Position numbers and translations under genes: made by a program. From contig ADNK01002106.1 in NCBI GenBank assembly GCA_000320545.1, positions 1 to 64,000 on the forward strand: 64,000 nt of DNA, in the 5' to 3' direction. The notes under the pieces were generated by a model, which saw only the letters and a list, made by a program, of their open reading frames with translations, was not told the DNA's origin and did no database searches. Source of the stretch: Bigelowiella natans CCMP2755 (Eukaryota > Protista > Cercozoa). Shown piece by piece: positions 13,583-60,565 of this stretch; position 1 is the first letter of the stretch, and every line of letters starts with the position of its first letter.

Positions 13583-16500
13583 GGTGTGTGTATTTGCGTG
13601 TTTACATTTATGCAATATTGAATAAAAAGAAGGAAAGATGGGTGAGGGCTGCTTATATCCTCCTTGTTCCGTGATTCGTCTTTCTCCTACTGCTTCTTCT
13701 TCTTCCTCCTCCTCTTCAATTATCATCGGTTTCCTTCCCCCACAAATTATGTCACTACAGCATCATACGATGTTCTAATCTGGACGATGACTCCCTCCTC
13801 CTCCTCCTCCTCCTCCTCCTTCTTCTCCTATTAACAAACGCAGGCGTTCAGATCAGGGGCGTGGAAATGTCTATATACATTCGACCTTCTCCCTGGGGAT
13901 TTGATAGAGCTACTACCAAGCACTGGGGGAGAGGTAACCAGCGCAGCCAGTTTGATGGCCGACACAGTCCTCTTTATTGTTATGCCAAATTCCGACACGC
14001 CATCATCACGTTTTTTTCCCCATTACACTGAATGAGAAGACATCGATAAGAACTCGATACTGCAGCTGTGAGCTCATCGGTTTTTCTGTAACCGTCATTT
14101 TGGTGCGACACGATGATGATTTGATAAAGCGATCTCCTTCTATCCCCCCCCCTTCCCCCCCCCCCCCCACCTTCACCCCAAACACCGTCTCAAAAGGGAA
14201 CCTGCCCTTGCGACTGTGTGCTACTGAGCGGGACGTGTGTTGTGAATGAAGCAATGCTCACCGGGGAAAGTGTGCCACAAGTGAAGGAACCTCTGGTGAG
14301 GACGTAAAAGAATAATAATGACAATAATAATAATAATAAATAATAGAACGCTGACCATGAAAGGAGAGGGGGAGGCGGTTCGCGTGCTCAACGCTAGTGC
14401 CAACCACAACAAACGCAATTTAATTATCAGGTGGCTCGCAATGGCAGTGATAGCAGCGGCGCCGGAGGAGAGGAAAGGCTGTCCATCGACAAGAAACACA
14501 AGAGGCACATAATCTTCGGAGGAACTAAGATCATACTCACGGATAAGACCGGAGGGAGTGGCAGCGCCGTTGCTCCTGTCCCCACCGCGCTGATGAAGAA
14601 GAAGAAGAAGAAGACACCTGCTACCGGAGCAGCCGCTGCCGCAGCAGCAGCAACACCGGTGGTTTTCAAGGTGAAACCGAGGCCGATGAAGGAGAAGCCG
14701 TGCATAGCGTACGTGCTGCGAACAGGCTTCGGCACGGCTCAGGGGAATCTCGTCAGGACGATACTGTTCTCCACTGAGCGAGTCTCGGTTAACAACACGG
14801 AGAGCCTCCTCTTCATCCTATTCCTGCTGGTCTTCGCCGTCATTGCCTCCGCGTACGTCCTCGTCAAGGGCCTGGAGGACGAAACGCGGTCGCGGTACAA
14901 GCTGATCTTGAATTGCATCATGATCGTCACGTCGGTCGTTCCACCCGAGCTGCCGATGGAGCTCTCGCTGGCCGTGAACACGTCCCTTTTCGAGCTTTTC
15001 AAGCTGGATGTCTTCTGCACAGAGCCGTTTCGCATCCCCCTCGGGGGGGCGGTGGACGTCTGCTGCTTCGACAAGACCGGGACGCTCACCTCAGAGCAGT
15101 TCCTCGTCGAGGGCGTTACCGAGACTAAGGCGATGATGACGATGATGGCGGCGAATAATGGCAGTGCAGCACCAGCGGCGGCGGGAGCAGAAAAGCAGCC
15201 CGAGGAGAAGAAGACTGATGACGCTTCTCCTCTGGATGCTGCCGCCGAGGCGAAAGTGCCCGCCATCCTTGACCCCATGAACTTGCGCAGAGAGCAGCAG
15301 CTTGTCCTCGCCGGGTGCCACTCTATCGTGCAAATGCCTGGAGGAGGAGGAGGAGGAGGAGGAGGAGGAGGGGGCAGGGCAGCGAGCCGCGCTGGGAGCT
15401 ATGGCGGCGGCAGCTTGCTCGGCGATCCTATGGAAATCGCGGCGTTCGAGGCGATGGGGTGGAGCATGAACAAAAGCGGAGCGGCGATATCCCGGGGCCG
15501 CGAAGAGAGCGTGAAGGTGTTCCGCAAGTTTCCCTTCTCCTCCGAGCTGCAGCGTATGGCCACGATCGTCCTCGCCGAGAGGTCAATGGAGTACTGGATC
15601 ACGGCCAAGGGTTCCCCGGAGCGCATGGGCCCGCAGTACGCCACCCTCCCCAACGGCTACGAGGACGCACACCGCCACTTCTCCTCGCAGGGGTACCGCG
15701 TGCTCGCACTGGGGTACCGCCGCGTTGGGAAGGCGTCCTCCGAGTGCAGCCGTTCGGTGAGGAAAATGGGCAGGGCGGACGTGGAGAAGGATCTGGTGTT
15801 CGGGGGCTTCCTCCTGCTGCGCACCGCGCTGAAGCGGTACAGCCTGGATACGGTGAAGGCGCTCAAGGGCTCCTCGCACAACGTGGTGATGATCACGGGC
15901 GATCACACGCTCACCGCCTGCTACGTTGCTTCGGAGGTTGGAATCTCCACGCATAAGTACCCCAGCGAGTCTTTAGTGCTTACTGCAGTCTCGACTTCGA
16001 CGGCGACGAATGATGGCGAAAGCGATAGAACATCAGCCGATACCAAGGGGGAGGGAGGAAGGGAGATGAAGGAAAAGGCGTCTGGGTCTGCAGCAGCCCC
16101 ACCGGCTTCGTCGTCGTCATCACCGTTTAAATTTGAGTGGGTGAGTGTTGACAGGCACACGCGCATCACATACGACCCCGAGCAGACGGCGTCTCTGGCG
16201 AGGAAATTCGACTTGTGCGTCTCTGGCTTCGTTGTGGAGAAGATGCTAGAGCAGGAAGGCATGGCCTACATCGAGGGATCCATCCGCTTCATCAAGGTCT
16301 TTGCGCGATTTTCCCCCTCCCAGAAGGAGCTCGTCCTGCTCTCTCTGAAGGGTCATGGGCTGACGACGTTGATGTGTGGTGACGGCACCAACGACGTCGG
16401 GGCGCTGAAGCAGGCCCACGTTGGCGTGGCACTTATCTCCAGCAGCAACCTCATTCCGCTCTCATCAATCCAACAAGGGCATCACCAAAATCATCAAAAT

Positions 16501-17508
16501 AGGAAACAGCCATTCTCTTCGTCCTCCTCATCTGAATTGAGGAGAAGAGGCTCGGCTCGAGCTGGCAAGATTCACCCGAGGGCAAGGGGCCGGAAGCAAC
16601 CGGGCGCGGTGCCCCCGCCCCAAATCACTCCGGCAGAAACTGGCGCGGGTAGAGGCGGTGGAGGCATGCGGGAGGAAAAGAAGGTTAAGGTGTTCGGCAT
16701 GGAGCTGGATCTGGAGGAGGAGCAGGAGCTCGGAATAATACGACTCGGCGACGCATCGATCGCCGCCCCCTTCACGTCAAAGCGGCCCTATGTGAGTGCG
16801 GTTGCGCACATCATCCGGCAGGGTCGCTGTGCCCTGGTGACTACGTATCAGATGTTCCGGATCCTCGCCCTCAACTGCCTCGTGTCCGCGTACAGCATGA
16901 GCGTGCTCTATCTCGACGGCGTCAAGTATGGTGATACGCAGATGACGGTCGCCTCGCTGGCCATAACGCTGTTCTTCTTCTTCATCTCTCGATCCACGCC
17001 GCTCAAGCAGCTCTCCGCCGAGCGCCCGGCAGCGCGGCTATTCGAGGTTGGGTTCTTCGTGGAGATCATGGGTCAGTTTGCCGTGCACATGGTGACGCTG
17101 CTGACGGCGGTGGCATGGGCAATGCCGCACACGCCGCGCGATAAAGAGACGCTGGACCCCGACGGGTTGTTCAAGCCGAACGTGCTCAATACCGTTGTTT
17201 TCCTGATATCTACGTCGATGACGGTCGCCACCTTCCTTGCCAACTACCGCGGCCACCCGTTTATGATATCTCTCCGTGAGAACAAGCTGCTCCTCTACTC
17301 GCTGCTTTCGACAGAGCTGTTGCTTTTGGTGTGTGCGCTCGACTTCCTCCGCCCCCTCAACTACCTTATGGAGCTTGCCCCTATGCCCACGGTGCAGTTT
17401 GGTCTTAGCATCTTCGGCCTGATGGTTGCCGATCTGACCGTCGCGGTGGGATTCACATGGGCTGTGCGAGGCGCCTTCGCAAATGTACCACGGCCGTCTG
17501 ATCGATAA
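10869..17508 (+). CDS. ATP13A1: P5A-type ATPase (ATP13A1/Spf1 orthologue)
   Basis: 5' exons: [61 protein letters not shown]. Terminal exon 14431-17508: [52 protein letters not shown]. Confidence 0.95.
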
Positions 17509-43960: not shown

Positions 43961-44846
43961 CTTCTTACCTCCGAGATTAAAAGGAAGCACGTAAAAAAAA
44001 AAGAAGGCTGGAAGCTCCCACTTCACTATGCGAAGAAGGTCAGAATCAGCCAATTGCGAAGACCAAAATAAGTCTTTTCTCGGCCCATTTCGATAGATCT
44101 AGGACGACAAAAGAACAGAAGCTCTTACGCGACGCAGCAACACGTGGGCTACGTATGCTTGGAGAAATCCCGGTGTCAGGTCTACTTATCCTTTAATCTA
44201 TGGGCATTTATTTCAATTTTGGCCGGAATAAAACATATTTAGAGGTTAAACGGAAAGATGTGGTGGATAGTGTTATGGTCAGTGACCGTCTGTGCCCGCG
44301 CTTGTGGCCCAAATTTAGGATTAAGGAGCAGGGCTTATTAGCTATTTTTGAGCCCTGTGAGCCATGTTCATGACCTAGATCTAGGAGAATTTCCTCATAT
44401 ACAAGAATGACCAGTATCTTCAGGGATTCGGGATTATGAGAAAGGCTCCGCGTCACTGGTATTGAAACGCCGTGTGTATGAGACAAATATGTGACAAAGA
44501 GAATTGTCGTCTATAAAAAATTACAAATATTTTATATTTCTGTTCTTGGCCGTTCAAGTCCGCCTCGTCGTCCTCAGTCAGACAAGCAGTTAGGGATCAT
44601 AGAATATAAAATATAGTCTATAATTATTTTGAGACAAGTCATTAATGTTTTTTTAGGCTTGCAAATCCTCGGCGTTATCGACCTCAATTTAGGGTTTTGG
44701 CCCTGAAAGTCCGCGTGCATACTCACTTCTGGCCATTCCTTGACTTACACTCACCGGTCCTACTTCTTTCTTCTGTAGAGGAGAGGTAGAATACACAGCA
44801 GAACAGGGGTCGAAATTGGAGAAGTCTAGAATTGAAGGATTTGAAG

Positions 44847-47800
44847 ATGACTGCAACGACTGCTTCCAGACGAATTACTAAGAATCTGAAGCTCGACAAA
44901 GCAGAGGTGCTGTCTTATCGACTCGTGATTGACTTTTGTAGTAATTTTCACACAGTTGTTTGTAGAACTTAAGATTTCCTCTCTACATTACAGGCTGCGT
45001 CCATGAAGGAACAGAAGAAGAAGGTAGGAAAAGGATACATCTCTGATGAAAGTGTCTCGGAAGATGATCTTCTCTTTTTTAGGTGGTGCCAACAGATAAG
45101 GCTCCCTTTTCTCAGGAAGCACTTTGGGCGTTGTACTTCGCTATCGTTGGTGGCATCTCCTCAGCACTCATGTACGACTCTGAGACGATAAAGGTAGGAT
45201 CCGTATGAGTAAGAAGTAAAATAGTAATCTCTGTAATAATCGAGACGTGGGAAGCACGTGCCTACTTGCTGTGTGACACTGATGTGACGACTGGGCCCTC
45301 ATTACATTAGAACTTCTCAAGTTCGGGATTCTCAGCTTCTGCTCTGATCGATGGCATCAATAACTTCACTTGGAAAAGAGGAGTGACAAATTGCTCTAGT
45401 CTGCAGTTTCTCATCATTGTCCACGTGGTCTACGTCTTCTGTCTGTTCGGTGTGCAGCAATATGCGGTATGTTTGAGTGCAAATTACCCCGGCGTGTTTG
45501 AAGAGTGCCCTCTCTAACTTTCGCTGAAATTATTCATCTGCGTCACATGTATCAGGCTTCACGTAAGAGCATTCCAGGCTGGCTCCCAGCTATGCGTCAG
45601 GCTCACAACTGCTTCCTTGCGCTTCTTTCTGGCCTCATGCTTACTGGACTTATCGTCGGAGGACTAATGGACTCACGTTTCGACTCCTTCTACACGTAAG
45701 TCGAATACATAATTCCCCATATTTATCATTACAGTGATCTCACAATCTCTGGGAATATAAAGGAGGGCCGTCAAAAATTAGTTTTTTAACTTTATTCTCG
45801 TGCGTGTGCCGCGCGCCTCTCTCTTTCTCTCCTACTAGGTTTGCGTGCCGTCGACCAAGCGAAAACCAACCTGGCCTTACTGTATGGACTATGTACATCT
45901 TTTACTTGTCAAAGATGCTGGAGTTCATTGACACCTTCTTCCTCATCCTCTCGAAGAAAAAAGTGATCTTGCTTCACAAAGTCCACCACCTCACCACGAT
46001 GTCTCTTGTCTGGCATTCTCTTGAGGCCGGAATCAACAGTGAAATCCTTTCCGGAGGTCTCAACTGCTTCGTCCACACTCTCATGTACGCTTACTTTGCT
46101 TTCCCCAAGGGCAACGCATGGCTCCGGCAGTACATGACTTCCACGCAGATTATTCAGTTCGTGCTGTGTCTCATTGCGTTCGTTTACGCTGTACACTCCC
46201 GTCTCGTGGCAAAGACGCCATGTTATGGAACGCTTCTTTCTGAGTTGCATGGAATCGCTATGTACGGGGTGTATCTGGCCATGTTCACTGCTTTCTTCAT
46301 CTCCAACTACTGCAAGTCGAAGAAGCCATCATCCGCTTCGAAGCCCAGCGACGCTGCTGCTGCTGCTGAGGCCGACAGAACAGCCGCAAAGGAGGCGCCT
46401 AAAGACATGTACTCGATGGCCGCCAAGAGCTTTATCTGGGCGTGCTACTTCGCTGTGGTATCAATGGGCTGTGCGTGGCTGATGCAGGACTCCCGCACCA
46501 TGAAGGCCCTCTCGAAGTCGGAGATCTCCCTCGAGTCGGTTGTCCAGGCTGCGGTGGACGACGTCGAAGGCTTCCAGTGGGTTTCCGGTCAAACTCGGGG
46601 CGGCAGCTGGCAGTTCCTCGCCGGTGTGCACGTGGTCTACGCTGTGGTCCTGAGCACCCTCACTTACATCATGAAGGGGATTGAGAAGCGCATCTCGTGG
46701 GCGAAGCCTCTCAGCAAGGCGCACAACCTCTTCATGGCGTCCCTCTCCGCCTTCATGCTCACTATGCTTGTTTATGGGGCCGTCCGCGATGGTCGATTCG
46801 CTAGCTGGAATGCATTCGTCTGCGAGCGCCCGGGGCACTCCGGCCTGATCCAATGGGCGATGTACGTGTTCTACCTCTCCAAGATGCTCGAGTTCATCGA
46901 CACGTTCCTGCTGGTTATGTCCAAGAAGAAGGTAATCCTCCTCCACAAGGTCCACCACCTGACGACGATGTCGCTCGTCTGGCACTCGCTGGAGACTGAC
47001 CTTGCGACTGAGATCCTCTGCGGGGGGCTCAACTGCTTCGTCCACACCCTCATGTACGCCTACTTCGCCTTCCCCAAGGGCAACGCATGGCTTCGCAAGT
47101 ACATGACCTCCACGCAGCTCCTCCAATTCGTGTTCTGCTTGATCGGGCTTGGATACTGCGCATACAAGCGCATGACGCTCGGCACCTCTTCTTGCAACGG
47201 AACCGTTGGCGCTGACGCCCACGGCATCATCATGTACGGGGTCTACCTGGGCATGTTCGCCATGTTTTTCTACGATCAATACCTCAAGAAGTCATCGAAG
47301 AAGAACCAAAAGGGCAACAAGTCTGCTGCTGCTACCGCTGCTGGTGGTGAAAAGAAGCAGCGCGACGCCGAGAAGCACGAGGTCATCCTGTACGGCAAGC
47401 GCGTGGACGTCACCAGTTTCATCAAGAAGCACCCAGGAGGGTCCAAGGTACTCCGCATCTTCCGAAACCGCGACGCGACCGAACAGTTTGAGTCCTACCA
47501 CTCCGACCGCGCGCACAAGTGGCTGAAGGCGCTCCCCAAGCGTGACGCCGAGAAGGACGACTACCTCTCGTCGCAAACCGAGATCGCCAAGGACTTCAAG
47601 AAGATGATCGAGAACTTCAAGAAGATGGGCTACTACAAGGCGGATCTGCTAGAGGAGATCATGAAAGTCTCCTTAGTATTCGGTCCTTACATCGCGGGGC
47701 ACTACCTCCTGTGGAACGGTCAGCCTCTCGTCGCTGTGCTTCTCATGGGGTTCGGTCTTTACTACGCAGGCTGGGTGTCGCACGACTACCTCCATCATGC

Positions 47801-48563
47801 CGTCATCCGCGGCGGTAAGAACAGGGACGAAACCACCGCCGCCGTGGTACCTTTGAACAATGCCATGGGCTACGTGATTGGCTTCATGCAGGGGTATGAG
47901 GTCGACTGGTGGAGGGCTCGCCACAACACGCACCACGTCGTCACCAACGAGTTCGGAAACGACCCCGACATCAAGACCGCGCCGCTGCTCACGTACGTCC
48001 GCAACTCACCCGCCATCGCCAAGGGCCTCAACTGGTTCCAGCGCTGGCAGCAGTACTACTACCTCCCTGTGATGGCCATTCTCGACCTGTACTGGAGGCT
48101 CGAGTCGATCGCCTACATTGCAATGAGGCTGCCGCGCTACTGGAAACAGGCACTGGTCATGGCCGCTCACATGGCGTGGACGGCGTACGCGTTCCAAGGC
48201 CAATGGAAGTACTTCCTCATCATGACGCTCTACCGCGGCTTCATGACCGGCACCATCGTTTTCTCCACTCACTACGGCGAAGACATTCTAGACGGAGACC
48301 ATAAGCTGACGCTCGTGGAGCAGACTGCTCTCACATCCCGAAACATCGCCGGCGGTTACGTCGCCAACCTGCTCACTGGTTTCCTCTCCCTTCAGACCGA
48401 ACACCACCTCTTCCCTATGATGCCGACTGCCAACCTCGCAAAGGCGCGCCCTCACGTCCAGGCGTTCTTCAAGAAGCACAAGCTCGAGTACCGTGAGAGC
48501 AACATCATCGAATGCATCAGGTACAACATCAGGGCGCTCAGCTACCAGCACCTGCTCGAATAG
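44847..48563 (+). CDS. Trimodular fusion: ELO-family elongase + ELO-family elongase + cytochrome-b5 front-end (delta-8-like) fatty acid desaturase, about 1073 aa
   Basis: Exons 44847-44906, 44994-45023, 45083-45193, 45311-45466, 45556-45695 and 45839-48563 join in frame through GT-AG introns (3222 nt). Two copies of KMLEFIDT / HKVHH / NCFVHTLMYAYF / TSTQxxQF are followed by HPGG, HDYLHH, HNTHH and QTEHH, with no stop between modules. Confidence 0.92.
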
Positions 48564-49196
48564 ATTGGAGAGGCTCAAGGGAGGCGGCTTATATCGACAT
48601 TGCGCTAGTGCAATCGGAAGGGTTTCTATTTCGCTTATGTCAGATCTGTACTCACCCAGATAAGGAAAATAATGATATACTCCATGTCAGTGATAGAGTA
48701 GGGCAGACAACAGGTTTCTGTGAAAAGCCTCTCTTTTTGGAAATATATGCGAACTGAAACCGGTTCATTAGTACAAGGCCTCAAGATCCCATTATTTTTC
48801 TGTTGTATACTTGCGCACGCAAGTACGGCGTGCATGTTTCCCGCAGGGATTTCAAATATTACCTAATTCGAATCGACTATACCCGCTATCTCTGCATCCG
48901 TTTCACAATCGACTGCGTCTTTCTAGCATGCGACAGCACTTCTCTCACGCGCTACGTACGCTCATCATAATAGGCAGAGCGCTTGGCGGTACATGTCACT
49001 GCTGCATGATAGACATGCAATACACACTATATACTGCGCGGCCACCGCGCGATATCGGAAGATATACAGCGCATGTGGATGCTTTTGCATGGATGAGACA
49101 CATAGTAGCAGATGAATTCAATAGACACAACATGACATGACAAGTGCTGTGGCCACTGCTAGACATGTACAGCTCTAGTGCTTAACAAATGAGACA

Positions 49197-49258
49197 ACTA
49201 CATCAGGATGAATATTGAAAAGTTTGATCACATCATCATCATCACATTCGTCTCATGC
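49197..49258 (+). repeat. Short dispersed repeat, copy B
   Basis: ctacatcaggatgaatattgaaaagtttgatcac...cattcgtctca is similar to 1706-1762. Confidence 0.55.
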
Positions 49259-49532
49259 ATGTCTAGATGTCTAGACACGTGTGACGTGTGCAATGTGTGA
49301 CACGTACATGCACAATCGAAAGTGACAATGACATGATTCGCGCTGCTGCCATTGCGATGCATGCTGAATGATGAAGCTTTATTGGTTTGATTTGGCTAGT
49401 TGGGCACAAAAAGCAATGTATTCTCTGCGCGTCGCTAGGCGGTCGCTTATCACGTACGATGTCCTTCTTACGAGACGATAAACGATTTATTGAACAATCG
49501 TGGGGCGCCGGCAGCAAGCCGAAGCTAGCTCG

Positions 49533-53821: not shown

Positions 53822-56800
53822 ATGTCGTACAGAAAGGGCGGGAGACTAGACGAGGATGATGGGAGTGGAGAAAAAGGGCTCATAGAAAGAGGCGGCGGTG
53901 GCCAGCGTGTGAAGGGGAGGTCGCAGTTGGGTTTGGATGTGCTCGCAAGCAACAAGCGCGAGGAAAGTAAGTTGTTCTTATCATCTCTTCCATTTGGTAT
54001 TTTTCCTACAATGAACGTGTTTAAACTAATTTATCCATCATAAATATGAATAAAACAAGGGAAAAATGCACAGAGGAAGCGGCGGCCGAGGAAGGATGAA
54101 GATGCTGTCAGGGACGAATTCGGGCGAACGAAATCTCTTGCAGGATCAGATCATAGTGGGGAGGATGATGATGACTACCATTTCGCAAAGCCAAAGGTAT
54201 AATAAGAATCTAATTCTGAGAAACAAACTCACCCAATGATCGTTTCATAACTATAGCACAAGCGCAGACGGGAAGAAGGAGGCAGCTACTCAAGAAGCAG
54301 AAGTAGCAGCAAGGGGGGTGACTCAGATCGCAGACGTGATAATAGCAGACGGCGCACTGACCGATATGATAGAGACCGAGACGATGATTACAGGGGAAGG
54401 TCGCGCAGCAGTAGCAGGAGCTCGAGCAGGAGCTCGAGCAGGAGTCGCGACAAAGGTTCCAACCGCCGCGTCTCCTCTTGGGATGATGATTCAGATGAGG
54501 AGGACGAGGATGGGCGTGGCCGATCGCGATCTCGATACTCAGACGACATCACCCCTCGAAGAGATCGCTCGCGCTCTAAGACTCCATTGCTTCAAGGTAG
54601 ATTCGCGTCACGGACGCCACGGAGAGGTGCCGCAGGTGATACTCCCAGGAGAGAATCGAGTGGGGGGCAAGCTACACCTCTCCGCCGTGATGAGCCTGGC
54701 ACCCCGCAGAGGTATGGCGGCAAGAATAAACTAGATTCATACAAGGGTAATGATGCTAGTGGCAACGGCGCGGTGAAGTTGTCGAACAAGGAGAAAAAGC
54801 AGTGGGAAAGGAGTGAAAAGTCGGTGGAGCAAGAATGGTACGCTATGGATGAGGGCGGCTACAACGAGGGGCAAAAGGCCTTCCTCGGCGACCCCGACAA
54901 AATGAAGAAGAAAGAAGAAGAGCTTGTCAAGAGCCAGGTGCAACGATTGACCGCAAGGCAGAGGATGCGCAACGAGGACCAGGATCGTTGGGAGGACTCC
55001 CGGCTGCTTGCGAGTGGCGCCGTCACACAGGCCAACGTGCAGACCGAGTTTGAAGACGAGACTGAGAATAAGGTGCATCTCATCGTGCACAACCTCAAGC
55101 CACCGTTCCTCACCAAGGGCTTCAAGTTCACCACGCAGCAGAAGATGGTCTCGGTGGTCAAGGATGCGACCAACGACTTCGCCCAGTGCGCGCGCAAGGG
55201 CAGTGCGCTGCTGAGGGAGGTGCGCGAGCAGAACGAGCGATCCAAGATGCGACAGCGGTTTTGGGAACTTGCGGGAAGTCGGCTAGGTGATGCGCTTGGG
55301 GTGGAGAAGGAGAAGAAGGAAGAGGAGAAGGATACTGATGCCTCCAACATGGACGAGGAGGGTAACGTCGACTATAAGAATGCGTCGCAATTCGCGGACC
55401 ACATGAAAGGCAAGAACAATGCTGCCTCCGCGTTTGCCAAAACTAAGACGATTACTCAACAGAGGGAGTTCCTGCCTATCTTCACCAAGCGAGATGAGCT
55501 GCTGCAGATCGTGAGAGACCATCAAATCGTCGTGGTCGTTGGGCAGACGGGATCCGGGAAAACAACGCAAATGACCCAATATATGCTGGAGGACGGGTAT
55601 GGGGAAACAGGGATGATCGGCTGCACGCAGCCCAGGCGTGTGGCCGCCATGTCTGTGGCGAAGCGAGTGAGCGAAGAGCAGAGTTGTGAGCTAGGAGACC
55701 GGGTCGGGTACTCGATCCGGTTTGAGGATGTGACTGGCCCCAACACCAAGATAAAGTACATGACCGATGGCATGCTTCTGCGCGAGTCGATAAACGATCC
55801 GGACATCGAGAAGTACTCCGTGATTATCATGGACGAAGCGCACGAGCGCTCGTTGAACACGGACGTGCTGTTCGGCATCCTCCGCAAGGTTTGCGCCCGT
55901 CGCAACAACCTAAAGCTCATTGTGACCAGCGCGACCATGGACTCCAAGAAGTTCTCCAACTTTTTCGCGGGCGCCCCTGTCTTCGAGATCCCCGGGCGCA
56001 CATTCAAGGTCGACATGCAGTTCTCCAAGGGGGTGGTGGAGGACTACTTGGACGCTGCCGTGAAGCAGATCCTTTCGATCCATCTTGGGGGAATACAGGG
56101 CGACATCCTGGTGTTCATGACTGGGCAGGAGGACATCGAGGCCACCTGCTGCGTGCTGGCCGACCGCATCGACCAGCTCGACGAAGGAGTCGCCCCGTTG
56201 GCCATTCTGCCCCTCTACTCCCAGCTGCCCTCGGAGCTCCAAGCTAAGATCTTCCAAGCCGCTCCGGAGGGAACCCGCAAGTGCATCGTGTCGACCAACA
56301 TCGCGGAGACGTCCCTCACAGTGGACGGCATCCGTTTCGTGATAGATTCGGGCTACTGCAAGCTCAAGGTCTTTAACCCGCGCATTGGGATGGACTCGCT
56401 CAAGGTCACGCCGGTCAGCCAAGCCAATGCGCGCCAGAGGGCCGGAAGGGCAGGGAGGACAACCAACGGCTACGCGTATCACCTCTACACGGAGCAGCAG
56501 TTTCACTACGAGCTGCTCAAGACCACCGTTCCAGAGATCCAGCGCACGAATCTGGGCAACGTGGTGTTACTGCTCAAGAGCCTCGGTGTCGACAACTTGC
56601 TGGAGTTCGACTTCATGGACCCTCCCCCCCAAGAGAACATCGAGAACTCGATGTACCAGCTCTGGGTGCTGGGCGCGCTGGACAATACGGCCGCTCTGAC
56701 GAAGATGGGCCGGAAAATGGTCGAGTTCCCTCTGGACCCGGCGCTCTCAAAGATGCTCATCGTCGCTGAGGAGCTCGGATGCAGCTCGGAGATCCTGACC

Positions 56801-57571
56801 ATCGTCTCCATGCTCTCGGTGCCCCGCATCTTCTTCCGCCCCCCGGACCGCGCAGAGGAGTCAGATGCGGCGAGGGAGAAGTTTCAGGTGCCGGAGAGCG
56901 ACCACCTCACGCTGCTGCACGTCTTCCAACGATGGAAGGCGGAGCACTACCGGGTGGACTGGTGCCAGAAGCACTTCATCCACGTCAAGACTCTGCGTAA
57001 GGTGCGAGAGATCCGATCCCAGCTGCTCGACATCATGAAGTCGCAGCGTATGGTGGTGACATCGACGGGCACTGACTGGGACCCCATCCGGAAGGCCATC
57101 TGCTCTGCCTACTTCCAGAACTGCGGCCGCCTCAAGGGGATCGGCCAGTATGTCAACATGCGGAACGGGATGCCCTGCCACCTGCACCCCACGAGCGCGC
57201 TCTATGGCCTCGGCCACACGCCCGACTACGTGGTGTACCATGAGCTGGTGATGACGTCCAAGGAGTACATGCGCACGGTCACCTCCATCGATGGCAAGTG
57301 GCTCCCCGAGGTCGGACCGATGTTCTTCAGCATCAAGGAATCGTACGCCGAGACGCAGGCGCGCAAAAGGAAGGCCGAGGAAAACAAGAAGAAGATGGAC
57401 CAGGAGATGGAGGCCCACCTCGAGGAGAAGAAGAAGAAGAAGGCCGAGATCGCTCAGAAAGAGAAAACAGGGCTGCAGAAGCTCAAGCAGCAGGTCTCCG
57501 TTGCGGGAGGAAAACTCTCCAGGAAGCAGAAGAAATTTATCTTCAAGAAGAAGAGGAGATTTGGCATGTGA
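53822..57571 (+). CDS. DHX38: Pre-mRNA splicing DEAH-box helicase PRP16/DHX38
   Basis: Exons 53822-53966, 54060-54196 and 54257-57571. N-terminal [13 protein letters not shown]-rich region, [40 protein letters not shown]. Confidence 0.95.
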
Positions 57572-58562: not shown

Positions 58563-59638
58563 TCATCTTGGAGTCCATTTCAGTCCAAGTTCGCGGGACA
58601 CGACTCGGGGTTCATCGGTGCCTAGCTTGCAGGCTGTTCCTCGTAAGTAGCCCAGCTTTGTCTTGAAGACCGAGAAGTTAAGAACACCTGCTTCTGCCTC
58701 TCGCAGCAAGGCAACATCCTCGTCACAGAAGCGTATCTCGTTCCGTCCACTGGTCGCAAACTGGAAAGGCTCCACGAATTGATCCGGCCCAATGTCAAGC
58801 GGGCCGTCCAAGTGAGCAGGAACAACGCGCTGGAAGTCCCACTGCCTGACCGTGTCTAGCCACCGCTGCAGAGAACCGTCACCGACACCCCGGTTCAGAA
58901 TGATTTGGATGATGGGGAGAAGCGCGGGCTTGCCGTTGGCGCTGTAGGTTTTGAACGACTCCAGAGCTGACTCTTCTCTCCAGGCAAAAGGCTGCCACCC
59001 CCCCCATCCAAGCTCAAAGTTTGGGTCCAGCCTCAGGAGAGGGCCTAGTCCGATATCAGCCTGAACTGAGCCAGGAATAAAAAAGTTGAACAGCAGGACT
59101 ATACGCCTCCATCCCTTCCGTCGCATCTCGGGGGTATCAGGCACAGTTTCTAACGGGTCGTCGCGTGCATGGAAGAGCAGCGCCCGCACATATTCGGGAT
59201 CGCTTGTGATTATCTCCGGAGGCTCATCCGTCACCGCAAAGACAGCATCGCACACCATCAGAGTCTTCGACGGCTTGTGTACAAATGCGGCGTCTTGGTA
59301 CATGGAAGCTACTCCAGGTTGCACGGTAAGCACCTCATGCTCGAATTCGCCGTCCCAGAGACCAGGAAGTCCTTTGCTGCTCGGTGGCAAAGGTTTCGCC
59401 CAGCTCGGAAAGCCTAGGTAGCTGTTGGGCAGGGGGACCGGGAAGGAGTACTGCTTGTCGGTTACGTAGAACTCTGCCTTCGGGAACCGACGAGCAAACG
59501 GACCTGCCAGGACCTTGTGCTCCACCGCTACCTGGAGTTGTTGTTGTTGTTGTTGATGATGATGATGATGAAACGCAGGCAGGTTGTCTTCCAACAGCTC
59601 TACTGTATCGTGTGGTTGCACATGCATGTATGTTGGAA

Positions 59639-59675
<37 letters not shown>

Positions 59676-60565
59676 GTACGTGTGTCTGTGGTGCTTGCTG
59701 TGTGGATGCTGGCGTGCATATATAAAGAAATGACCGAAGGTAGAATGATGTATTTTATTGGTCCGTATTCGTCGATAAGGGGTTCCAGAAGGGATAGGCA
59801 TTCTTCCGTTGGGGCGACTGGAGCGTACACGAACAGGCCACCCGAGTTCATCTTGATGACGGTCATACGGATCGGAACGTGGACGTAGTAGATACCTGAC
59901 GTGCGTTGTATGAGAAGAGAATAAGAATAATCGGCCTGGTGATAGATCTTTATTCGGCCCTCTTCGATGTTCATCGCCATACAGTCATATATGCAAAAAG
60001 AATGTAAATATACATATACAAATACAAACACATACATACACGGGAAAGGGGGGGGGGGGGGGACGGCGAAGAAATGCAGAATATCCGTACCGATGAGCTG
60101 ATCAAATGTCCACACTCCAGGTCCAGCCTCACGGCGAATTGTCTTACGCCTCGAGTATGGAAATACGGGCAATGCCGGCCAAAGCGGCCAATCAGCCTCT
60201 TTCGTAATGGCCGCCTCTGCCGCTCCCCCAGGCAACGAATTGACTCCCAATACCCCCAACCCAAGGCTCGCTGTGCCTCTTAGAATACATTTTCGATTCA
60301 ATTTCGTGCACGGTTGTAGTGTGGGCATATCATTATCATCATCGCACTCAGCTTGCGGCGGCACAAGGTCACGTGGCAGGTCACGTGGCAGATGATGCGG
60401 TCGCCGTGCTAATCGGCGCCGAGGGAGAGACTGCAGAAGGCGGGAAATTGAGCCGGACGCCTTTTTCCGTGATAGGTACTGGGATCTAGAAGAAGACGAC
60501 GCGAGCAGTCCATAGCAGTGTATGATGGTGGCTGAAAGAAGCAGCCCCAACGTGATACCCCTCAT
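58563..60565 (-). CDS. DUF4336-family protein with plastid-type presequence, 3 exons
   Basis: WPLWPALPVFPYSRRKTIRRE, WTFDQLIG-IYYVHVPIRMTVIK..GGLFVYAPVAPT, IILPS-VAVEHK, LLFHARD, GWRRIVL, VPAHLD. The N-terminus has a signal peptide and a Ser/Arg-rich segment. Confidence 0.85.

What the first reader, a model, noticed from the sequence alone, without database searches (positions are those of the whole stretch)
44847..48563. Natural three-enzyme PUFA 'multizyme': elongase-elongase-desaturase in one polypeptide
Seen: one reading frame holds two full ELO/GNS1 elongase modules (His boxes HKVHH near 45975 and 46944) followed by a cytochrome-b5 domain (HPGG near 47430) and a front-end desaturase (HDYLHH 47781, HNTHH 47922, QTEHH 48393). 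Both inter-module junctions lie inside a single 2.7-kb exon, so the fusion does not depend on splice prediction. The five upstream exons rebuild the N-terminal half of module 1, which aligns with module 2. Known: aerobic LC-PUFA synthesis normally uses separate elongases and desaturases, and two-domain elongase-desaturase fusions have been reported from Euglena. I do not know of a described ELO-ELO-desaturase architecture. Inference: it may carry out and channel the alternative delta-8 pathway (C18 delta-9 elongation then delta-8 desaturation), possibly with a second elongation step.
Basis: partly seen in the sequence, partly recalled or inferred. Interest (0 to 1): 0.92.

Follow-up and report, generated by a model that had tools for sequence, protein, structure and literature searches.

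The report
Natural elongase-elongase-desaturase fusion gene
This alga (Bigelowiella natans) makes one long membrane protein that joins two fatty-acid elongase units to a delta-8-type desaturase, a natural version of a fusion that engineers built to boost omega-3 production, and no paper I could find describes it.

Summary
Window 44847-48563 (+) is a six-exon gene of 1073 codons. Its last 2.7-kb exon holds, in one frame, the catalytic part of a first ELO module, a complete second ELO module, a cytochrome b5 domain and a front-end desaturase. Every motif sits at the stated coordinate. Spliced RNA contigs from four independent studies remove five GT..AG introns, and single contigs run through both junctions. 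The genome is Bigelowiella natans. The same ELO-ELO-b5-desaturase protein occurs in at least four other named chlorarachniophytes, one of them confirmed in its own genome.

Both ELO modules keep all four catalytic motifs. The duplication is old and both copies are under purifying selection. The desaturase is 61% identical to the Rebecca (Pavlova) salina delta-8 desaturase, so delta-9 elongation followed by delta-8 desaturation is the best reading. The elongase specificity is inferred, not shown.

Each ELO module has an extra helix before the usual seven. That would place both ends in the cytosol and make tandem fusion topologically possible.

Wider context:
- Natural ELO-desaturase fusions are widespread: two more in this genome, plus Mataza, Vermistella, Paramoeba and Chloroparvula.
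- Ten literature searches found no description of them.

Verdict: new variant of a known kind.

The parts
44725..48888 (+). Transcribed region (approximate ends, taken from assembled RNA contigs)
   Evidence: Contigs of runs X1, X2, X3 and X14 begin at 44725-44744 and end at 48879-48888.
44847..44906 (+). Coding exon 1 (20 codons, MTATT...). Its ATG is the first ATG of the transcript.
   Evidence: No ATG in 44725-44846, in-frame stop at 44787, GT donor at 44907.
44994..45023 (+). Coding exon 2 (10 codons). It contains the ATG at 45003 used by the JGI model.
   Evidence: Joints in the RNA contigs, AG/GT borders.
45083..45193 (+). Coding exon 3: the extra N-terminal helix (TM0) of ELO module 1
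   Evidence: Its translation is found in P0001. Hydrophobic segment at P0001 20-38; helix 18-36 in the model.
45311..45466 (+). Coding exon 4: the loop and helix 1 of ELO module 1
   Evidence: RNA joints. It aligns with module 2.
45556..45695 (+). Coding exon 5: helix 2 of ELO module 1
   Evidence: RNA joints. Its translation is found in P0001.
45839..48563 (+). Coding exon 6 (2725 nt, stop codon included). It holds the rest of ELO1, linker 1, ELO2, linker 2, cytochrome b5 and the desaturase.
   Evidence: ORF, Pfam, continuous RNA contigs.
45839..46313 (+). Catalytic core of ELO module 1 (helices 3-7), with KMLEFIDT 45912, HKVHH 45975, HTLMYAY 46074 and TSTQIIQF 46137
46314..46415 (+). Linker 1: Lys/Ala/Ser-rich and predicted disordered
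   Evidence: pLDDT below 50 at P0001 303-328.
46416..47312 (+). ELO module 2, complete (TM0 plus 7 helices), with KMLEFIDT 46881, HKVHH 46944, HTLMYAY 47043 and TSTQLLQF 47106
   Evidence: Pfam ELO covers positions 5-241 of 242. Helices, motifs.
47313..47366 (+). Linker 2: Lys-rich and predicted disordered
   Evidence: pLDDT below 50 at P0001 628-652.
47367..47555 (+). Cytochrome b5 domain (HPGG at 47430)
   Evidence: Pfam PF00173. Foldseek matches to cytochrome b5 structures.
47646..48560 (+). Front-end desaturase of delta-8 type, with His boxes HDYLHH 47781, HNTHH 47922 and QTEHH 48393
   Evidence: Pfam PF00487. 61% identity to D8FAD_REBSA.

Best explanation
This is a real, expressed nuclear gene of the chlorarachniophyte alga Bigelowiella natans. 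It encodes one membrane polypeptide of about 1073 residues with four units in the order ELO1, ELO2, cytochrome b5, front-end desaturase, joined by two short disordered Lys/Ala-rich linkers.

Shown:
- Both ELO modules keep all four catalytic boxes.
- The duplicate is old and both copies are under purifying selection.
- The architecture is shared by all sampled chlorarachniophytes.
- A related organism has the shorter form ELO-b5-desaturase, and its ELO resembles module 2.
- The desaturase is a close relative of the delta-8 desaturase of Rebecca (Pavlova) salina.
- Each ELO module has one extra helix ahead of the canonical seven.

Inferred:
- The ancestor was an ELO-b5-delta-8-desaturase fusion, and the ELO unit was duplicated in tandem before chlorarachniophytes diverged.
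- The extra helix puts both ends of each module on the cytosolic side. Modules can then be strung together, and the b5 and desaturase domains end up on the correct side of the ER membrane.
- The ELO modules condense C18 delta-9 fatty acyl-CoAs (18:2n-6, 18:3n-3) with malonyl-CoA. After the three other elongase-complex enzymes act, the tethered desaturase places the delta-8 double bond in 20:2 and 20:3. These are the first two steps of the 'alternative' route to arachidonic acid and EPA.
- The fusion fixes stoichiometry and co-location at the elongase complex. It does not provide a direct tunnel between active sites.
- Because the two modules are 70% identical in the catalytic helices, both most likely perform the same condensation, giving two elongase sites per desaturase.
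For: - Architecture and frame.
- Expression and splicing: spliced contigs from four studies, with single contigs spanning both junctions; exon phases.
- Organism: P0135 is named jgi/Bigna1 and matches G000 at 100%.
- Orthologues of 1043-1068 aa with the same Pfam set: Lotharella oceanica, Norrisiella sphaerica, a MMETSP0109 protein (organism field reads 'Chlora...', taken as Chlorarachnion) and Amorphochlora amoebiformis. The Amorphochlora gene is collinear over at least 28 exons in its own genome.
- Motifs are intact in both modules in 5 of 6 full-length orthologues.
- The ELO1 clade has 100/99 support and contains all six species. The single ELO of P0009 groups with the ELO2 copies and shares the ELO2 state at 4 of 5 fixed differences.
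- ELO1 against ELO2 core: pS 0.72 (saturated), dN 0.11.
- Module identity is 38% in the N-terminal part and 70% in the helix 3-7 part.
- Desaturase: 61% to D8FAD_REBSA, 57% to a Pavlovales delta-8 desaturase, but only 27-30% to the other front-end desaturases of the same genome.
- Extra helix: hydropathy and the AlphaFold model, mean pLDDT 86.6, with 1+7 helices per module. ELOVL7 is the best solved match, TM 0.74.
- Precedent for benefit: engineered delta-9 elongase/delta-8 desaturase fusions nearly doubled delta-8 activity (PMC4322222).
- EPA was the only fatty acid recovered from the single Chlorarachnion strain in the SAG survey (PMC3175173).
Against: - No enzyme activity was measured, so the substrate of either ELO module is unknown.
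- The word-based homologue search for the ELO module returned only 11 unnamed relatives and no characterised delta-9 elongase. The Atlas look-up gave only generic ELO clusters.
- ELOs of the same clade are also fused to a delta-9-type acyl-CoA desaturase (L002, P0025), so the clade is not tied to one substrate.
- The closest characterised desaturase, PsD8, is regarded as phospholipid-dependent (PMC4973703), whereas ELOs use acyl-CoA. Tethering may therefore not shorten the path.
- pTM is 0.52, so the relative placement of the domains is not predicted.
- Contigs cannot exclude extra shorter transcripts or cleavage of the protein at the linkers.
- The MMETSP0109 orthologue P0005 carries a frame-shift-like stretch over the His box of module 2.
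Confidence: 0.62

Rival explanations
1. The two ELO modules have split the work. They differ in substrate, for example n-6 against n-3 C18 acids, or a C18 delta-9 elongation plus a later C20-to-C22 elongation. The protein would then carry three different activities.
For: Both modules have been kept intact since before the chlorarachniophyte radiation, which suggests that neither is redundant. The N-terminal third (TM0 to helix 2) is only 38% identical between modules, and five positions are fixed differently.
Against: The helix 3-7 part that carries all the catalytic boxes is 70% identical between modules, and the boxes themselves are identical. From my own knowledge of ELOVL7, helix 1 lies outside the substrate barrel. 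The diverged parts are the extra helix, a loop and helices 1-2. Of these, the extra helix, the loop and helix 1 lie outside that barrel; helix 2 belongs to it, so a substrate difference cannot be excluded. There is no direct evidence on substrates.
Confidence: 0.22
2. The polypeptide is a precursor. It is cut at the disordered linkers, or shorter transcripts start inside the long exon, so the cell actually uses separate elongases and a separate desaturase. The fusion would then only ensure co-expression.
For: Both linkers are predicted disordered, Lys/Ala-rich and exposed. Assembled contigs cannot show transcript starts. B. natans also keeps a stand-alone copy of ELO1 (L008).
Against: The linked architecture is conserved in six or more species, and the wider family includes ELO-Des and ELO-Des-Des forms. 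The extra helix in each module is what an uncut tandem needs for a consistent topology. No contig ends at the junctions apart from the break at the repeated His-box region.
Confidence: 0.1
3. One ELO module is catalytically silent and serves only as a membrane scaffold or pseudo-dimer partner for the active one.
For: The MMETSP0109 sequence (taken as Chlorarachnion) has a garbled stretch over the His box of module 2. The model gives no reliable inter-domain placement (pTM 0.52), so a packing role cannot be judged.
Against: All four boxes are intact in both modules in the other five species. About half of the compared columns are invariant in each module: 130 and 137 of 273. dN is 0.11 against saturated synonymous change. 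The garbled stretch looks like two compensating frame errors in a transcriptome assembly.
Confidence: 0.05
4. The tandem arrangement is an assembly or gene-model artefact.
For: The modules share a 300-nt repeat at 76% identity. Some RNA assemblies break there (X1 and X2 contigs end at 45977-46004). One public Amorphochlora transcript (P0008, 724 aa) is a collapsed chimera of ELO1 and ELO2.
Against: Single RNA contigs in two independent studies cross the whole region without a mismatch. The genome contig agrees with them. An independent Amorphochlora genome carries the same order. Five further species give full-length proteins.
Confidence: 0.01

Closest known systems
Engineered delta-9 elongase / delta-8 desaturase fusion genes used in Yarrowia lipolytica for EPA production (Damude et al. 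2008, as cited in PMC4322222)
   Same: An ELO-type elongase and a delta-8 front-end desaturase sit in one polypeptide. The reported benefit was roughly doubled delta-8 desaturase activity.
   Different: Those fusions are man-made from separate Euglena and Eutreptiella genes and have one elongase unit. The protein here is natural, conserved across a whole algal class, has two elongase units, and each unit has an extra helix.
Rebecca (Pavlova) salina acyl-lipid delta-8 desaturase (D8FAD_REBSA, P0027)
   Same: 61% identity over the whole b5-plus-desaturase part. Same HPGG motif and three His boxes, with Q in the third.
   Different: The haptophyte enzyme is a stand-alone protein of 427 aa and is regarded as phospholipid-dependent (PMC4973703). 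Here the domain is the C-terminal end of a 1073-aa fusion, and its acyl carrier is unknown.
ELO/ELOVL condensing enzymes (Pfam PF01151; human ELOVL7, PDB 6y7f)
   Same: The four conserved boxes and the seven-helix fold. Foldseek TM is 0.74 over 248 columns.
   Different: There are two copies in tandem. Each is preceded by an eighth helix and followed by further enzymes. The elongated substrate is unknown.
Uncharacterised ELO-desaturase fusions in other protists: P0009 (ELO-b5-Des, 772 aa), Mataza sp. P0023 and Paramoeba atlantica P0270 (ELO followed by two b5-desaturase units), Vermistella antarctica P0014, Chloroparvula japonica P0148
   Same: The same ELO clade and, at the C-terminus, a delta-8-like desaturase (42-58% identity).
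   Different: They have a single ELO. Several carry a second, different desaturase instead of a second ELO. The Mataza and Vermistella ELOs lack the extra N-terminal helix. In the representative library only one 50% cluster has the ELO-ELO-Des form.
[quoted passage not shown] 2007, cited in PMC4973703; the details are from my own knowledge)
   Same: Physical linkage of consecutive steps of the alternative pathway.
   Different: That case is neighbouring genes, not one polypeptide. As I recall, its elongating enzyme is of the FAE1/KCS type rather than ELO.

Membership tests
ELO/GNS1/SUR4 fatty-acid elongase (PF01151), module 1 | Pfam match above the gathering score, plus the four boxes KxxExxDT, HxxHH, HxxMYxY and TxxQxxQ | tested here: met
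   Second ELO stretch. G000 hit at 45777-46328, 142 bits. Boxes at 45912, 45975, 46074 and 46137.
ELO/GNS1/SUR4 fatty-acid elongase (PF01151), module 2 | Pfam match above the gathering score, plus the four boxes | tested here: met
   Profile positions 5-241 of 242. Boxes at 46881, 46944, 47043 and 47106.
ELO/ELOVL fold | Seven-helix barrel as in ELOVL7 | tested here: met
   The AlphaFold model has seven helices per module plus one extra. Foldseek best match is 6y7f, TM 0.74.
C18 delta-9-specific PUFA elongase (Isochrysis IgASE1 / Euglena type) | Sequence grouping with characterised delta-9 elongases | tested here: inconclusive
   No named delta-9 elongase appeared among the 11 relatives found. 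The search is word-based and sees only close kin. No reference sequences were available for a tree.
C18 delta-9-specific PUFA elongase | Elongation of 18:2n-6 and 18:3n-3 to 20:2 and 20:3 | not testable with these tools
   Needs heterologous expression and fatty-acid analysis.
Front-end (cytochrome b5 fusion) desaturase | N-terminal cytochrome b5 with HPGG, and three His boxes with Q replacing the first H of the third | tested here: met
   PF00173 and PF00487. HPGG, HDYLHH, HNTHH and QTEHH.
PUFA delta-8 desaturase (Pavlova/Rebecca type) | Close sequence kinship to a characterised delta-8 desaturase, clearly above kinship to other front-end desaturases | tested here: met
   61% to D8FAD_REBSA and 57% to a Pavlovales delta-8 desaturase, against 27-30% to the other front-end desaturases of the same genome.
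PUFA delta-8 desaturase | Delta-8 desaturation of 20:2n-6 and 20:3n-3 | not testable with these tools
   Needs an activity assay.
Elongase-desaturase 'multizyme' (single functional polypeptide) | One transcript and one open frame across all units | tested here: met
   Single RNA contigs span all junctions and the frame is open.
Elongase-desaturase 'multizyme' (single functional polypeptide) | The protein persists uncut and all units are active | not testable with these tools
   Needs proteomics or immunoblotting, plus mutant assays.

The most novel reading that the evidence does not exclude
Chlorarachniophytes, and more widely Rhizaria, Amoebozoa and some green picoalgae, build parts of the aerobic PUFA pathway as natural covalent assembly lines. 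An ELO unit is fused to the very desaturase that acts on its elongation product. Here two differently specialised ELO units feed an acyl-CoA-dependent delta-8 desaturase. This would avoid the acyl-CoA/phospholipid 'substrate dichotomy' that limits engineered omega-3 production.
Probability: 0.25. Interest if true: 0.85.

Novelty: new variant of a known kind. Interest (0 to 1): 0.7.

Why it matters
Aerobic long-chain PUFA synthesis is normally described as a relay between separate elongases, which act on acyl-CoA, and desaturases, which often act on phospholipid-linked chains. The hand-over between those two pools is the main bottleneck when the pathway is moved into crops or yeast (PMC4973703).

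Engineers fused a delta-9 elongase to a delta-8 desaturase and nearly doubled the desaturase step (PMC4322222). This gene shows that nature reached the same solution long ago. It keeps the fusion under selection in a whole algal class and adds a second elongase unit.

Three consequences follow:
- It adds chlorarachniophytes to the short list of organisms likely to use the alternative delta-9/delta-8 route.
- It offers ready-made linkers, and an eight-helix ELO module whose ends both face the cytosol, as design rules for fusions.
- It makes directly testable whether tethering changes the acyl carrier or the flux.

The related ELO-Des-Des proteins of Mataza, Vermistella and Paramoeba may hold three steps of the pathway in one chain.

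Tried and rejected
- Literature: ten full-text searches found no paper on a natural ELO-desaturase fusion. The only fusions found were engineered. Subscription journals and patents are not covered, so this is absence in the library, not proof.
- ELO subtype: the homologue search with module 2 gave 11 unnamed relatives and the Atlas gave generic ELO clusters. Neither assigns a substrate.
- Earlier scan notes: nothing by place or by words.
- Misassembly was considered and rejected.
- Recent gene conversion between modules was considered and rejected. Nucleotide identity is 76% over the 300-nt repeat and synonymous sites are saturated.
- A genuine single-ELO form in Amorphochlora (P0008) was rejected. 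It is a collapsed transcript, identical to the two-ELO form after the repeated His-box stretch.
- The antisense ORF at 46461-47279 (272 aa) is taken as a shadow of the GC-rich coding strand and was not followed.
- The loose contig ends at 46353 and 47343 lie on GCT-repeat (alanine) stretches and belong to unrelated transcripts.
- Domain arrangement cannot be read from the model, because pTM is 0.52. No complex prediction was run, because no binding claim is made.
- Joined spliced model: the 1073-residue spliced translation was not assembled or sent to any search. Exons were translated one by one. All searches used window references or the stored protein P0001.
Full report
**1. The observation**

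The ORF listing shows one open frame of 919 codons at 45804-48563 on the + strand. Pfam finds three families in it: ELO in two stretches (E 6.7e-87), Cyt-b5, and FA_desaturase.
- HKVHH at 45975 and 46944
- HPGG at 47430
- HDYLHH at 47781
- HNTHH at 47922
- QTEHH at 48393

The other three ELO boxes (KxxExxDT, HxxMYxY, TxxQxxQF) are also present twice.

**2. Gene model and expression**

One run search found about twenty runs of one organism that hold 83-87% of the sampled words of 44700-48700. That share is what a spliced RNA would give. I laid the contigs of four runs from four different studies on 44200-49400.

- All four show the same five joints with GT..AG ends.
- One contig (X14, record 6, 3656 nt) runs from 44744 to 48888 with no mismatch. 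Another (X3, record 14) runs from 45160 to 48879.
- Both junctions, ELO1-ELO2 and ELO2-b5, are therefore present in single assembled transcripts.
- Some assemblies break at 45977-46004. That is the His-box stretch repeated in module 2 (300-nt repeat, 76% identity), so the break is an assembler effect.

The six exons are 44847-44906, 44994-45023, 45083-45193, 45311-45466, 45556-45695 and 45839-48563. They are in phase, total 3222 nt, and all have AG/GT borders. There is no ATG in the 5' leader, and an in-frame stop lies at 44787. The JGI model P0001 (1050 aa) starts 23 codons later, at 45003.

I translated the exons one at a time and did not assemble or search the joined model. All database work used window references or the stored protein P0001. 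P0001 was reported as 100% identical over the ORF searched. It differs from the window's translation at two residues: A/S in exon 4 (one search compared) and R/K in exon 6.

**3. Organism and conservation**

A relative of module 1 carries the source name jgi/Bigna1/43518 and matches another contig of this genome at 100%. The genome is therefore Bigelowiella natans.

Full-length proteins of 1043-1068 aa with the same three Pfam families come from several chlorarachniophytes:
- Lotharella oceanica (P0002)
- Norrisiella sphaerica (P0003)
- a MMETSP0109 protein whose organism field reads 'Chlora...', taken as Chlorarachnion (P0005)
- Amorphochlora amoebiformis (P0267, NCBI GAB5360687.1)
- two further unnamed transcriptome or JGI entries (P0004, P0006)

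The Amorphochlora gene lies on an 859-kb contig. It is split into at least 28 small exons over 21 kb, collinear in the order ELO1, ELO2, b5, desaturase. B. natans has thus lost all introns from the 3' 2.7 kb, which is why the junctions fall inside one exon here.

A 724-aa Amorphochlora entry with a single ELO (P0008) is a collapsed transcript. It is ELO1 up to the repeated His-box stretch and identical to the two-ELO form after it.

**4. The two elongase modules**

- The modules are 53% identical overall. Identity is 38% in the part from the extra helix to helix 2, and 70% in helices 3-7, which carry all the boxes.
- All four boxes are intact in both modules in five of six full-length orthologues. 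The exception, P0005, has a frame-shift-like stretch and was not resolved.
- In a maximum-likelihood tree, the ELO1 copies of all six species form one clade (100/99). The ELO2 copies lie outside it, unresolved, together with the single ELO of P0009.
- P0009 is a 772-aa ELO-b5-desaturase from a different, compact genome. A gene on the other strand ends 113 bp upstream, so no second ELO is hidden there. It shares the ELO2 state at four of the five positions fixed differently between the modules.
- Between the two B. natans cores, synonymous sites are saturated (pS 0.72) while dN is 0.11.

Together these results indicate an ancestral ELO-b5-desaturase fusion and a tandem duplication of the ELO unit before the sampled chlorarachniophytes diverged. 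They also indicate purifying selection on both copies since then, with no recent gene conversion.

**5. Topology**

Hydropathy finds an additional hydrophobic segment ahead of the first canonical ELO helix in module 1 (P0001 20-38), in module 2 (340-358) and in P0009. It is absent from the N-terminal ELOs of Mataza and Vermistella.

The AlphaFold model (mean pLDDT 86.6) gives one helix plus seven in each module. The linkers at 303-328 and 628-652 are disordered. The best solved match is human ELOVL7, TM 0.74.

From my own knowledge of ELOVL7, the canonical seven-helix ELO has a luminal N-terminus and a cytosolic C-terminus. An eighth helix at the front would place both ends in the cytosol. That is what a tandem needs, and what the b5 and desaturase domains need. 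This step is an inference. pTM is 0.52, so the mutual placement of the domains is not predicted.

**6. The desaturase**

The b5-plus-desaturase part is 61% identical over its full length to the Rebecca salina acyl-lipid 8-desaturase (Swiss-Prot D8FAD_REBSA). It is 57% identical to a Pavlovales delta-8 desaturase and 44% to a Capsaspora protein named delta-8 desaturase. It is only 27-30% identical to the other front-end desaturases of the same genome.

The Pavlova salina enzyme has been used as a working delta-8 desaturase in plants and is regarded as phospholipid-dependent (PMC4973703). [quoted passage not shown] Chlorarachniophytes are not on the list. EPA was the only fatty acid recovered from the single Chlorarachnion strain in the SAG survey (PMC3175173).

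**7. Function**

A delta-8 desaturase has substrates only if C18 delta-9 acids are first elongated to C20. The best reading is therefore that the ELO modules perform delta-9 elongation and the tethered desaturase performs the next step.

This is inferred. No named delta-9 elongase was among the relatives found. ELOs of the same clade are also fused to a delta-9-type acyl-CoA desaturase (L002 in this genome, P0025 in Mataza).

The common pattern appears to be an ELO fused to a desaturase that could act on its product. Because an ELO only condenses, the product must pass through three other enzymes first. The likely gain is co-location and fixed stoichiometry at the elongase complex, not a tunnel between sites. 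Engineered fusions of this pair nearly doubled delta-8 activity (PMC4322222).

**8. Wider family**

Besides this gene, B. natans has:
- an ELO-b5-desaturase ORF of 725 aa (L001), with a typical PUFA-type ELO and a different front-end desaturase
- an ELO-spacer-desaturase ORF of 860 aa (L002)
- a stand-alone copy of ELO1 (L008), 82% identical to it

Mataza sp. (P0023), Paramoeba atlantica (P0270) and Vermistella antarctica (P0014) have an ELO followed by two b5-desaturase units, the last of which is delta-8-like. The middle unit has a 54%-identical stand-alone counterpart in B. natans (L003). Chloroparvula japonica has an ELO-desaturase of 685 aa.

An exhaustive search of 1.84 billion representative proteins found many ELO-Des fusions but only one 50% cluster with ELO-ELO-Des.

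**9. Novelty and verdict**

The sequences are public but unnamed ('hypothetical protein', 'cytochrome b5 heme-binding domain-containing protein'). Ten searches of the paper library found no description of a natural ELO-desaturase fusion. The domains and chemistry are known, while the natural tandem architecture and its extra helix are new as far as I could check. I file it as a new variant of a known kind, with interest 0.7.

Noticed in passing
L001:3131-5308 (G000:C3382): A second elongase-desaturase fusion in the same genome. It is one ORF of 725 aa with ELO (FLHCYHH His box, PUFA-elongase type), Cyt-b5 and a front-end desaturase (HDAGH, HNKHH, QIEHH). The desaturase is only about 27% identical to the delta-8 domain. 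The Atlas features point to FADS1-like clusters, which is a lead only.
   Followed up: partly
L002:3421-6003 (G000:C573): A third fusion: one ORF of 860 aa with an ELO of the same clade as the window's modules. A hydrophobic spacer of about 330 aa without any Pfam match follows, then a delta-9-type acyl-CoA desaturase (HRLWSHR, HRVHH, HNWHH). Mataza sp. has the same architecture (P0025), and the same spacer sits inside the Mataza ELO-Des-Des protein (P0023). The spacer is unexplained.
   Followed up: partly
L008:4719-5961 (G000:C952): A stand-alone paralogue of ELO module 1 (JGI Bigna1/43518, P0135), 82% identical to it and with a similar exon pattern. It ends just after helix 7. In the tree it is sister to B. 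natans ELO1, so it is a recent partial copy. Its expression was not checked.
   Followed up: partly
L003:2529-3650 (G000:C1729): A stand-alone front-end desaturase, 54% identical to the middle desaturase of the Mataza ELO-Des-Des fusion and 47% to that of Vermistella. It is a candidate for the next pathway step (delta-5?), unassigned.
   Followed up: partly
P0005 residues about 535-595 (MMETSP0109 transcript, organism field truncated to 'Chlora...', taken as Chlorarachnion): Module 2 has an out-of-frame-looking stretch of about 60 residues that removes the His box and the HxxMYxY box, after which the normal sequence resumes. It is either two compensating assembly errors or a real loss of module 2 activity in that species.
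   Followed up: no
window 45840-48560: Third-position GC is 0.64 in the ELO1 core but 0.84 in ELO2 and 0.83 in the b5-desaturase part, all within one exon. In exons 1, 3 and 4 it is 0.45-0.57, and 0.80 in the ten-codon exon 2. The cause was not examined.
   Followed up: no
L009:3001-24306 (Amorphochlora amoebiformis, BAAHQB010000063.1): The orthologous gene has at least 28 exons of about 40-90 nt spread over 21 kb, against six exons in B. natans. This is a strong case of intron loss biased to the 3' part of the gene.
   Followed up: partly
window 14431-17508, 54587-57571, 58563-59801(-): Other long ORFs in the window: a P-type ATPase-like exon (Hydrolase, Cation_ATPase), a DEAH-box helicase (DEAD, Helicase_C, HA2, OB_NTP_bind) and a DUF4336 protein. 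None is lipid-related.
   Followed up: partly
L006:8001-10319 (GCA_977009605.1): The single-ELO relative P0009 lies intron-free in a compact genome of unknown identity. Its upstream neighbour has weak AP2 and SNAPC1 matches. Knowing the organism would date the ELO duplication.
   Followed up: no
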